A DNA stretch of 42,603 nt from Octopus bimaculoides (lineage: Eukaryota), in contig NC_068986.1 in assembly GCF_001194135.2 (NCBI RefSeq), positions 9,374,206 to 9,416,808 on the forward strand, read 5' to 3'. Made by a program: the position numbers and the translations under genes. Numbering within the stretch: position 1 is the stretch's first letter; the number at the start of each line of letters is the position of its first letter. The notes under the pieces are model-generated. The model saw only the letters and a list, made by a program, of their open reading frames with translations, was not told where the DNA came from and made no database searches. Below, in pieces: positions 15,517 to 15,800 of the stretch.

Positions 15517-15800
15517 AAGTGAAGTATATTTGCCACTTAAATGTGGCTGACCCCTAGGGGTGGATGTTACTGTTGCTTTTAGCCCCAGGAGGACATCTCC
15601 TCCAGCTGGCTTATCGACACACTTCTGTGTCCTGTCTATTTTTGCCACGATGAGAGGGATAACTTCCCTTGGCAAAAATAGACAGGACACAGAAGTGTGT
15701 CGATAAGCCAGCTGGAGGAGATGTCCTCCTGGGGCTAAAAGCAACAGTAACATCCACCCCTAGGGCTCAGCCACATTTAAGTGGCAAATATACTTCACTT
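15517..15800. repeat. Near-perfect long inverted repeat: 131-bp arms, 22-nt spacer
   Basis: 15517-15647 is the reverse complement of 15670-15800 with one mismatch (C15551 opposite C15766). Confidence 0.97.

What the first reader, a model, noticed from the sequence alone, without database searches (positions are those of the whole stretch)
15517..15800. 131-bp near-perfect intronic hairpin ~1 kb downstream of exon A
One mismatch in 131 bp with a 22-nt spacer, which itself pairs aggga/tccct and leaves a 7-nt bulge. There is no clean TSD, so it is not an obvious MITE; it may be a very recent inverted duplication or an inverted pseudo-LTR of the kind Penelope-like elements make (inference). In pre-mRNA it is a long dsRNA, a substrate for ADAR (very active in coleoids) or Dicer. 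In DNA it is a cruciform or fragile site.
Basis: partly seen in the sequence, partly recalled or inferred. Interest (0 to 1): 0.7.

Follow-up and report, generated by a model that had tools for sequence, protein, structure and literature searches.

The report
Back-to-back retroelement ends forming hairpin
A 284-bp near-perfect palindrome in octopus non-coding DNA is most likely two copies of the end of a Penelope-type jumping gene inserted head-to-head in one event, a known by-product of how these elements insert and one of very many such hairpins in octopus genomes.

Summary
The palindrome is real in the sequence. Arms 15517-15647 and 15670-15800 are 131 nt each with one mismatch, separated by a 22-nt centre. 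It is far beyond chance (fold z = -35.9).

A 13-bp exact direct repeat, ACTTAGAAAATAA, lies at 15458-15470 and 15797-15809. It bounds a larger unit: a 46-nt one-sided "tail", the left copy, the centre and the right copy. Repeats that long arise in 0.03% of shuffled flanks.

An Octopus bimaculoides protein model (A0A0L8IHK6) is a diverged copy of the arm plus 18-19 nt of the centre, and then continues into unrelated sequence. So the arm belongs to a repeat family, and the centre is part of the right-hand copy rather than a loop.

The layout is variable-length TSD, AT-rich target, head-to-head copies, and a tail on one outer end only. That matches published Penelope-like-element inserts ("inverted pLTRs").

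Not shown here: any link to an RT/GIY-YIG element, a hammerhead ribozyme, transcription, editing, small RNAs or read support. "Intronic" is also unverified.

Verdict: an ordinary young retroelement insertion, roughly 1 My old. Its roles as a dsRNA or cruciform are plausible but only inferred.

The parts
15458..15470 (.). Left copy of the 13-bp target-site duplication, ACTTAGAAAATAA
   Evidence: Exact direct repeat found by BLAST of the flanks. It occurs only at these two sites in the window, on either strand. A repeat of 13 nt or more at an element border occurs in 0.03% of shuffled flanks and at 0.5% of random window positions.
15471..15516 (-). 46-nt unpaired 'tail' at the outer (3') end of the left copy only. 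It has no counterpart on the right side.
   Evidence: It lies between the left TSD copy and the left arm and has no other match in the window. Its position corresponds to the one-sided 30-40-bp PLE tail described in PMC8557442, PMC3846280 and PMC11167929.
15517..15647 (-). Left copy of the repeat unit (palindrome arm A). Its inferred sense strand is the minus strand, with the 3' end pointing outward.
   Evidence: 131-nt arm. GC is 47%, against 26-40% in the flanks. It matches P0001 residues 1-25 at 96% on the + strand.
15648..15669 (+). Centre. About 3-4 nt of junction filler, CGA(T), then 18-19 nt that extend the right copy at its 5' end and contain the AGGGA-TAACT-TCCCT mini-hairpin.
   Evidence: P0001 (O. 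bimaculoides A0A0L8IHK6) continues from the arm through PREVIPL, which corresponds to window 15669 down to 15652, and then diverges. Fold of the centre.
15670..15800 (+). Right copy of the repeat unit (arm A'), sense on the plus strand, with no tail. Its last 4 nt, ACTT (15797-15800), are shared with the right TSD copy.
   Evidence: P0001 residues 1-32 match 15753-15652 on the minus strand at 91%.
15797..15809 (.). Right copy of the 13-bp target-site duplication
   Evidence: The reconstructed empty site...gaaaagacttagaaaataa|tttttatgaaatg..., is 78% A+T over 50 nt.
15551..15551 (.). The only arm mismatch (partner position 15766)
   Evidence: The JC distance between the arms is 0.0077.
14386..14474 (+). 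Context only: candidate 'exon A', ...ttttttctcag|ATGATG...CTTGTG|gtgagt...
   Evidence: Splice-like borders are visible in the sequence. The peptide DDDDNLGKPQLQLGFACFLVDQKTGDHLV has no Pfam match and no relative among 5.8 billion proteins, so coding status and the 'intron' label are unconfirmed.

Best explanation
The hairpin is the footprint of one retrotransposition event. A short repeat unit, about 150 nt plus an optional 46-nt 3' tail, was reverse-transcribed from both nicked strands of an AT-rich target (...AGAAAATAA|TTTTT...). The left-hand 3'-OH primed a copy that begins at the tail. The right-hand 3'-OH primed a second copy that begins 46 nt further in. The two cDNAs grew towards each other and were joined head-to-head by a template jump that left 3-4 filler nucleotides. 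Repair of the staggered nicks duplicated 13 bp of target. This is the layout that Penelope-like elements (PLEs) leave, an 'inverted pLTR' pair with a one-sided tail, here with no coding region between the copies. The donor was therefore either an extremely 5'-truncated PLE or a pLTR-sized non-autonomous unit. Shown: the palindrome, the 13-bp duplication, the one-sided tail, the AT-rich target, a paralogous non-palindromic copy, and the assignment of the centre to the right copy. Inferred: the reverse-transcription mechanism, PLE as the mobilising enzyme, an age of roughly 1 My, and all downstream effects. If the locus is transcribed, the stem would be a 131-bp dsRNA and a likely ADAR target. 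In DNA it is a moderate cruciform risk. My confidence in 'single-event retro-type head-to-head insertion of a repeat-family unit' is about 0.6. My confidence in 'PLE specifically' is about 0.4.
For: The 13-bp exact direct repeat bounds 15471-15796. It is unique to these two sites in the window and rare by chance. The unit is asymmetric, with a 46-nt tail on one outer end only. The arm GC of 47% in 26-40% GC flanks marks it as foreign DNA. P0001 from O. bimaculoides shares the arm plus 18-19 nt of the centre and then diverges, so the arm is a repeat-family unit, that copy does not turn back, and the centre belongs to the right copy. Each copy holds sequence the other lacks (centre versus tail), so neither can have been made from the other. 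Literature: PLE inserts commonly carry an adjacent inverted 5'-truncated copy, a 30-40-bp tail at only one end, and TSDs of variable length (PMC8557442). In A. vaga there are inverted pLTRs of 181-218 bp, 8-10-bp TSDs, a 31-bp tail on one inverted pLTR, palindromes at the pLTR 5' end and inverted junction, solo pLTRs and pLTR pairs without PLE coding sequence, with head-to-head the commonest arrangement (PMC3846280). A purified PLE protein nicks and extends both target strands, prefers AT-rich sites, and starts reverse transcription at two sites separated by the tail (PMC11167929). PLEs are present and recently active in Octopus vulgaris, with 31 families and 336 young insertions (PMC13282606).
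Against: No RT or GIY-YIG coding sequence is present in the window, and none could be linked to the arm, so PLE membership rests on anatomy alone. No hammerhead ribozyme was detected at E <= 10, although Naiad-type PLEs lack them and this copy may be too short to include one. The tail is 46 nt, longer than the published 30-40 bp, and I could not show that it belongs to the family. The TSD was found post hoc. The 4-nt ACTT overlap between the right copy and the TSD would also fit microhomology-primed internal initiation as in LINE twin priming, so a LINE-mobilised unit is not excluded. P0001 is a gene model, so its divergence point could be a splice junction rather than the end of the copy. No read-level support for the palindrome was available.
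Confidence: 0.5

Rival explanations
1. It is a palindromic MITE or foldback DNA transposon. On this reading the arms are very long terminal inverted repeats of a cut-and-paste element whose internal part has been deleted, and the O. bimaculoides paralogue is a longer or broken copy.
For: Near-complete self-complementarity. At least one other copy of the arm exists in an octopus genome. The arm end, AAGTGAAGT..., loosely recalls Tc1-like CAGTG termini (from memory, not tested). Tc1-Mariner and MITE families are recorded in O. vulgaris (PMC13282606).
Against: There is no duplication flush with the arm ends. TA, TAA/TTA and 8-bp options all fail or need a mutated base. The only significant flanking repeat is 13 bp long and asymmetric, enclosing 46 nt on one side only, which cut-and-paste transposition does not produce. 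No known TIR superfamily makes 13-bp TSDs (established knowledge). The paralogue does not turn back into a second arm.
Confidence: 0.12
2. It arose by a later DNA-level fold-back. A single pre-existing copy was duplicated in inverted orientation, either by replication template switching or by hairpin-primed repair of a break, with the short AGGGA/TCCCT inverted repeat as the turning point.
For: Short inverted repeats are known to seed palindrome formation (established knowledge). The centre contains a 5-bp stem. Self-priming has been proposed for PLE inverted junctions (PMC3846280).
Against: The right copy carries 18-19 nt of genuine family sequence (the centre) that the left copy lacks. The left copy carries the 46-nt tail inside the TSD that the right copy lacks. 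Neither copy can therefore be the template for the other. Extension from the TCCCT/AGGGA stem would copy the 7 nt CGATGAG, which are not mirrored. The outer end of the right copy abuts the TSD exactly.
Confidence: 0.12
3. It is an assembly artefact. On this reading a short-read scaffolded assembly produced a false palindrome from a single repeat copy or from a collapsed, more complex PLE structure.
For: The window is a gapped draft with eight N runs. PLE tandem and inverted structures are reported to cause problems in short-read assemblies (PMC8557442). No reads were available to me.
Against: The palindrome lies about 1.6-1.8 kb from the nearest gaps. The arms differ at one base, which a graph hairpin built from the same k-mers would not show. 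The two outer junctions differ (tail|arm on the left, arm|TSD on the right), and the right flank is not the mirror of the left. A biologically sensible TSD bounds the unit.
Confidence: 0.07
4. It is primarily a functional hairpin-RNA gene (miRNA-like, hpRNA or endo-siRNA precursor, or an editing-related structure) kept for its RNA product.
For: The stem is very stable. Generic miRNA-precursor models score 40-53 bits on it. Octopus has exceptionally high hyper-editing and many near-perfect dsRNA loci (PMC5625713).
Against: No Rfam family reaches its gathering score. The weak hits are many unrelated miRNA models, equally good on both strands and at about half their thresholds, which is what any perfect stem gives. 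A 131-bp stem is far longer than animal miRNA precursors (established knowledge). No similarity to any other part of the window suggests a target. One mismatch in 131 shows youth rather than conservation.
Confidence: 0.05

Closest known systems
Penelope-like element inserts with inverted pLTRs and a one-sided tail (e.g. Pen2a_Av and Pen2 derivatives of Adineta vaga, Naiad and Penelope/Poseidon inserts)
   Same: Head-to-head inverted copies of the element end; a tail of tens of bp on only one outer end; a TSD of variable length (8-10 bp in A. vaga, 13 bp here); an AT-rich target; a unit size of about 196 nt including the tail, against pLTRs of 181-218 bp; a small palindrome at the unit's 5' end and inverted junction (PMC3846280, PMC8557442, PMC11167929).
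   Different: Nothing lies between the two inverted copies except 3-4 nt. There is no direct pLTR, no RT/GIY-YIG ORF and no hammerhead ribozyme. The tail is 46 nt rather than 30-40. The link to an autonomous PLE is not demonstrated.
LINE-1 'twin priming' inversions
   Same: Both target 3'-OH ends prime reverse transcription. The second priming is internal and uses a few nt of microhomology (here ACTT). A long TSD results.
   Different: Twin priming copies non-overlapping parts of one RNA, so it gives an inversion, not a palindrome. Here the two copies overlap over 131 nt. There is also no poly(A) tail.
Palindromic MITEs (e.g. the near-palindromic Harbinger-derived repeats of Xenopus mentioned in PMC5625713)
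   Same: A short non-coding unit that folds on itself into a long dsRNA and can be edited without a partner copy.
   Different: MITEs carry a short fixed TSD flush with both inverted ends and are symmetric. This unit has a 13-bp TSD and a one-sided 46-nt extension.
Closely spaced inverted Alu pairs
   Same: Two inverted retroelement copies that form a long dsRNA (an ADAR substrate) and a potential cruciform or fragile site in DNA.
   Different: Alu pairs arise from two independent insertions, each with its own TSD and usually 10-15% divergence. This pair shares one TSD and differs at 1 of 131 positions.

Membership tests
Penelope-like element (PLE) insertion | A single ORF with a telomerase-like RT and a GIY-YIG endonuclease in full-length family members | not testable with these tools
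   No such ORF or motif occurs in the window. No octopus genome or repeat library was searchable. The protein searches found only P0001, a 54-aa junk ORF.
Penelope-like element (PLE) insertion | An adjacent inverted, 5'-truncated copy that forms an inverted repeat (head-to-head) | tested here: met
   Two copies have their 3' ends outward and their 5' ends meeting at 15648-15669.
Penelope-like element (PLE) insertion | An optional tail of tens of bp at only one end of the insert | tested here: met
   A 46-nt unpaired segment, 15471-15516, lies inside the TSD on the left side only. It is somewhat longer than the published 30-40 bp.
Penelope-like element (PLE) insertion | A target-site duplication of variable length at an AT-rich target | tested here: met
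   A 13-bp exact duplication (p about 3e-4 with shuffled flanks, 5e-3 empirically). The empty site is 78% A+T.
Penelope-like element (PLE) insertion | A hammerhead ribozyme motif in the pLTR (canonical clades; absent in Naiad/Chlamys) | tested here: not met
   No hammerhead family appears at E <= 10 in 15300-16000 on either strand. This is not decisive, because some PLE clades lack it and the copy may be truncated.
Penelope-like element (PLE) insertion | Direct pLTRs or a partial tandem arrangement | tested here: not met
   No direct repeat of the arm occurs in the window. Only the inverted pair is present. Solo and inverted-only pLTR structures are described in PMC3846280.
MITE (TIR DNA transposon derivative) | A TSD of family-specific length immediately flanking both terminal inverted repeats | tested here: not met
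   The flanks are ...CACGATA | arm ... arm | AGAAAAT.... No 2-10-bp duplication is flush with the ends, even when the boundaries are moved inward by 1-4 nt.
MITE (TIR DNA transposon derivative) | Many dispersed copies of the same symmetric structure | tested here: inconclusive
   There is no second copy in 42.6 kb. The one paralogue detected in O. bimaculoides does not turn back into a second arm. Genome-wide copy number could not be tested.
Rfam miRNA precursor families (mir-605, mir-942, MIR530 and others) | A score at or above the family's gathering threshold | tested here: not met
   No match at gathering thresholds. The best is 53 bits against a threshold of 98, on both strands, across unrelated families.

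The most novel reading that the evidence does not exclude
The unit is a full-length, roughly 200-nt non-autonomous element. The right copy and the O. bimaculoides paralogue appear to end at the same 5' position. It would be mobilised in trans by octopus PLE enzymes and would often insert as a perfect palindrome. Such a family would plant ready-made long dsRNA hairpins into introns and could be a specific, unrecognised contributor to the exceptionally high density of near-perfect dsRNA loci and ADAR hyper-editing in octopus.
Probability: 0.12. Interest if true: 0.5.

Novelty: new member of a known kind. Interest (0 to 1): 0.25.

Why it matters
As it stands, the result matters mainly for annotation. 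A striking 'intronic hairpin' turns out to be a transposon insertion scar with definable borders (15471-15796 plus a 13-bp TSD). It also shows that PLE-type double-strand priming can leave a bare palindrome with no coding sequence, which repeat-finders are likely to mislabel as a MITE or miss altogether. If the locus is transcribed, it is one more long perfect dsRNA in a genome already known for many of them. It may be edited or diced, but nothing suggests it was selected for that. If the family proved to be abundant and habitually palindromic, it would help explain where octopus dsRNA substrates come from.

Tried and rejected
1. Host gene. Candidate exons 2184-2327 and exon A were used as a joint protein query, with no relative found and no Pfam domain. 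I therefore could not fetch orthologous introns.
2. Exact look-up of five ORFs that cross the hairpin junctions: none is in the 15-billion-protein collection.
3. P0001's DNA: no encoding contig is on record, and its cluster has a single member.
4. P0002, the second hit of the exhaustive search (E = 5e-4), is a bacterial RTX/DUF4214 repeat protein. The match is 36% identity to its internal repeat, counted four times. Rejected as coincidence.
5. Arm k-mers in the O. vulgaris repeat paper's held supplement and in all held full texts: none.
6. A 25-nt arm pattern in metagenome and viral contig collections: none.
7. tRNA-like origin: ARAGORN finds nothing.
8. The sense-frame ORF. One frame is open through centre, arm and tail (66 codons, chance about 3%). 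However, P0001 shows the centre belongs to the other copy, there is no ATG, and there is no homologue, so I give it no weight.
9. Hammerhead ribozyme. The centre's CGATGAG-AGGGA...TCCCT resembles a CUGAUGAG-plus-stem-II core by eye, but it lacks the GAAA and no Rfam model matches.
10. A paralogous empty site for the flanks within the window: none.
11. The sigma-70 promoter and terminator scan does not apply to animal DNA and was ignored.
12. Pfam on RT-like fragments elsewhere in the window: no significant hits.
13. I left the third large protein search unused, because the remaining arm frames contain stops or lack an ATG and a hit was unlikely.

Full report
OBSERVATION. Its arms are 15517-15647 and 15670-15800, 131 nt each and 130/131 complementary, with a 22-nt centre, CGATGAGAGGGATAACTTCCCT. 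The one mismatch is at 15551/15766, inside a local CCCCTAGGGG palindrome. Folded as RNA, the region forms one continuous stem at -270.5 kcal/mol, against -84.2 +/- 5.2 for dinucleotide shuffles (z = -35.9). The centre forms the AGGGA/TCCCT stem and leaves 7 unpaired bases. This cannot be chance.

The arm has no second copy in the 42.6-kb window. The window itself is a gapped draft with eight N runs. It is rich in tRNA-like SINE copies and in TA/CA microsatellites, and the one protein relative found comes from Octopus bimaculoides. The source is therefore an octopus genome.

THE MISSED BORDER. But BLAST of the flanks showed a 13-nt exact direct repeat, ACTTAGAAAATAA. One copy is at 15458-15470, 46 nt to the left of the left arm. 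The other is at 15797-15809, straddling the end of the right arm.

I tested how often this happens by chance. With the element kept and its 400-nt flanks shuffled, a border repeat of 13 nt or more appeared in 0.03% of 3000 trials. For 284-bp pseudo-elements placed across this repeat-rich window, it appeared in 0.5% of 5770 positions. The 13-mer occurs nowhere else in the window on either strand. I found it post hoc, so I treat it as good but not conclusive evidence.

On that evidence the inserted unit is 15471-15796. It consists of a 46-nt unpaired tail, the left copy, the centre and the right copy, bounded by a 13-bp target-site duplication. The reconstructed empty site...gaaaagacttagaaaataa|tttttatgaaatg..., is 78% A+T. 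The arm has 47% GC, against 26-40% in the flanks.

A PARALOGUE. The 97-aa ORF that runs across the hairpin (15460-15753, minus strand) found one relative among 5.8 billion proteins. This is P0001 (UniProt A0A0L8IHK6), a 54-aa uncharacterised O. bimaculoides protein. The exhaustive HMMER search confirmed it.

P0001 follows the arm and then PREVIPL, which covers the first 18-19 nt of the centre read on the minus strand. It differs by a 6-nt deletion and one substitution. It then continues with 22 residues that match nothing near the hairpin.

Three things follow.
- The arm belongs to a repeat family with at least one diverged copy elsewhere.
- That copy does not turn back into a second arm.
- The arm-to-centre junction is a family property. 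Most of the 'spacer' is therefore the 5' continuation of the right-hand copy, which leaves only CGA(T) as junction filler.

One caveat applies. P0001 is a gene model, so its divergence point could be a splice site. I could not retrieve its DNA.

WHAT IT IS. A long TSD of non-fixed type, an AT-rich target and a one-sided extension do not fit cut-and-paste transposition. They do fit target-primed reverse transcription, and the specific layout matches published descriptions of Penelope-like elements.
- Craig et al. 2021 (PMC8557442) describe strong 5' truncation, an inverted 5'-truncated copy immediately adjacent that forms inverted repeats, a 30-40-bp tail often present at only one end, and TSDs of variable length.
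- Arkhipova et al. 2013 (PMC3846280) describe, in Adineta vaga, pLTRs of 181-218 bp, an adjacent inverted pLTR closing the insert, 8-10-bp TSDs, a 31-bp tail on one of the inverted pLTRs, palindromes at the pLTR 5' end and inverted junction, solo pLTRs, pLTR pairs without PLE coding sequence, and head-to-head as the commonest arrangement.
- The 2024 in-vitro study (PMC11167929) shows that a purified PLE protein cleaves and extends both target strands, unlike R2 or L1. It prefers AT-rich sites and starts reverse transcription at two internal sites separated by the tail.

That mechanism predicts TSD, tail, copy, inverted copy, TSD, which is what is seen here. The unit length of about 150 + 46 nt falls in the pLTR size range. 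PLEs are present and recently active in O. vulgaris (PMC13282606).

WHY NOT A LATER FOLD-BACK. The right copy has the 18-19-nt centre that the left copy lacks, and the left copy has the tail that the right copy lacks. Neither could have been copied from the other, so both must come from an external template. Also, extension from the AGGGA/TCCCT stem would have mirrored the 7 nt CGATGAG, and these are not mirrored.

WHY PROBABLY NOT AN ARTEFACT. The structure is 1.6-1.8 kb from the nearest gaps. The arms differ at one base. The two outer junctions are different sequences, and the right flank is not the mirror image of the left. A sensible TSD encloses the whole unit. Without reads, this possibility still cannot be closed.

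WHAT IS NOT SHOWN. No RT or GIY-YIG sequence is in the window, and none could be tied to the arm. No hammerhead ribozyme is detectable. The tail could not be shown to be family sequence.

The 4-nt ACTT shared by the right copy and the TSD would fit microhomology-primed internal initiation of the LINE twin-priming kind equally well. Classical twin priming, however, gives non-overlapping segments and not a palindrome. I therefore put about 0.6 on 'single-event retro-type head-to-head insertion' and about 0.4 on 'PLE specifically'.

AGE. One difference in 131 gives a JC distance of 0.0077 between the arms. On the O. vulgaris repeat clock (JC 0.09 to consensus = 25 My, PMC13282606), this is roughly 1 My. 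That figure is a minimum if the arms homogenise each other by gene conversion.

CONSEQUENCES (INFERRED). Exon A (14386-14474) has convincing splice-like borders but no protein relative, so 'intronic' is unverified. If the region is transcribed from either strand, the RNA would carry a 131-bp near-perfect duplex.

Porath et al. 2017 (PMC5625713) report that octopus has exceptionally high hyper-editing. They also report an exceptionally high fraction of loci able to form long near-perfect dsRNA, mostly from inverted repeats. Editing here is therefore likely but unremarkable.

The Rfam matches are generic miRNA hairpin models, at about half their thresholds and on both strands. They indicate only a perfect stem.

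For DNA, work in the yeast Alu-IR system summarised in PMC10164571 shows that widening the spacer from 12 to 20 bp reduces IR-induced recombination about 40-fold. A 22-nt asymmetric centre therefore makes this a moderate hazard, not an extreme one.

VERDICT. Two of its details need correcting: a TSD does exist, and the spacer is part of the element. This is a young, ordinary transposon scar of a known kind. Interest is low to moderate, unless the family proves to be an abundant palindrome-making non-autonomous PLE passenger.

Noticed in passing
window 30003-30504: A second compact palindromic structure. Its arms are 30003-30150 and 30346-30504, about 95% identical over ungapped columns, with a centre of about 195 nt. 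The arms include (GTT)n/(AAC)n and (TG)n/(CA)n runs. It is unrelated in sequence to the hairpin studied here, and I found no border duplication of 7 nt or more. It may be another head-to-head insertion.
   Followed up: partly
window 28802-28960, 31756-31914, 12083-12242: Three copies of a dispersed repeat of about 160 nt (81-84% identical). Two of them lie in opposite orientation 2.8 kb apart and bracket the second palindrome.
   Followed up: partly
window 2-364 (minus strand): A stop-free stretch with a LINE-type reverse-transcriptase N-terminal look (...KTGKAPGPSGITAEMLK...) runs off the window start. Pfam gave no significant hit for this 121-aa piece.
   Followed up: partly
window 29440-29734 (minus strand): Two adjacent stop-free peptides (...EMEKLSKYKDLEIEV... 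and ...IQKTALLGTAHILRKEL...) resemble, by eye, the C-terminal region of invertebrate retroelement ORFs. Pfam found nothing significant.
   Followed up: partly
window 13741-13917, 17200-17376, 4194-4373, 18007-18183, 19110-19278: Copies of a tRNA-like SINE (77-85% identical) lie next to TA/CA microsatellites. Several abut the N gaps, which suggests the assembly gaps sit in microsatellite tracts.
   Followed up: no
window 15517-15647: Each arm on its own contains four small local hairpins (GCCAC..GTGGC, CCCC..GGGG, GGAGGA..TCCTCC, GACACA..TGTGTC). It folds better than shuffles (z = -2.5 and -3.3 for the two strands). The arm has 1 CpG where 7.3 are expected.
   Followed up: partly
window 15034-15151: A 53-nt tandem-like direct repeat (72% identical, 65-nt spacing) lies upstream of the hairpin. 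It is part of a repeat that also occurs at 34646-34799 and 31587-31680.
   Followed up: no
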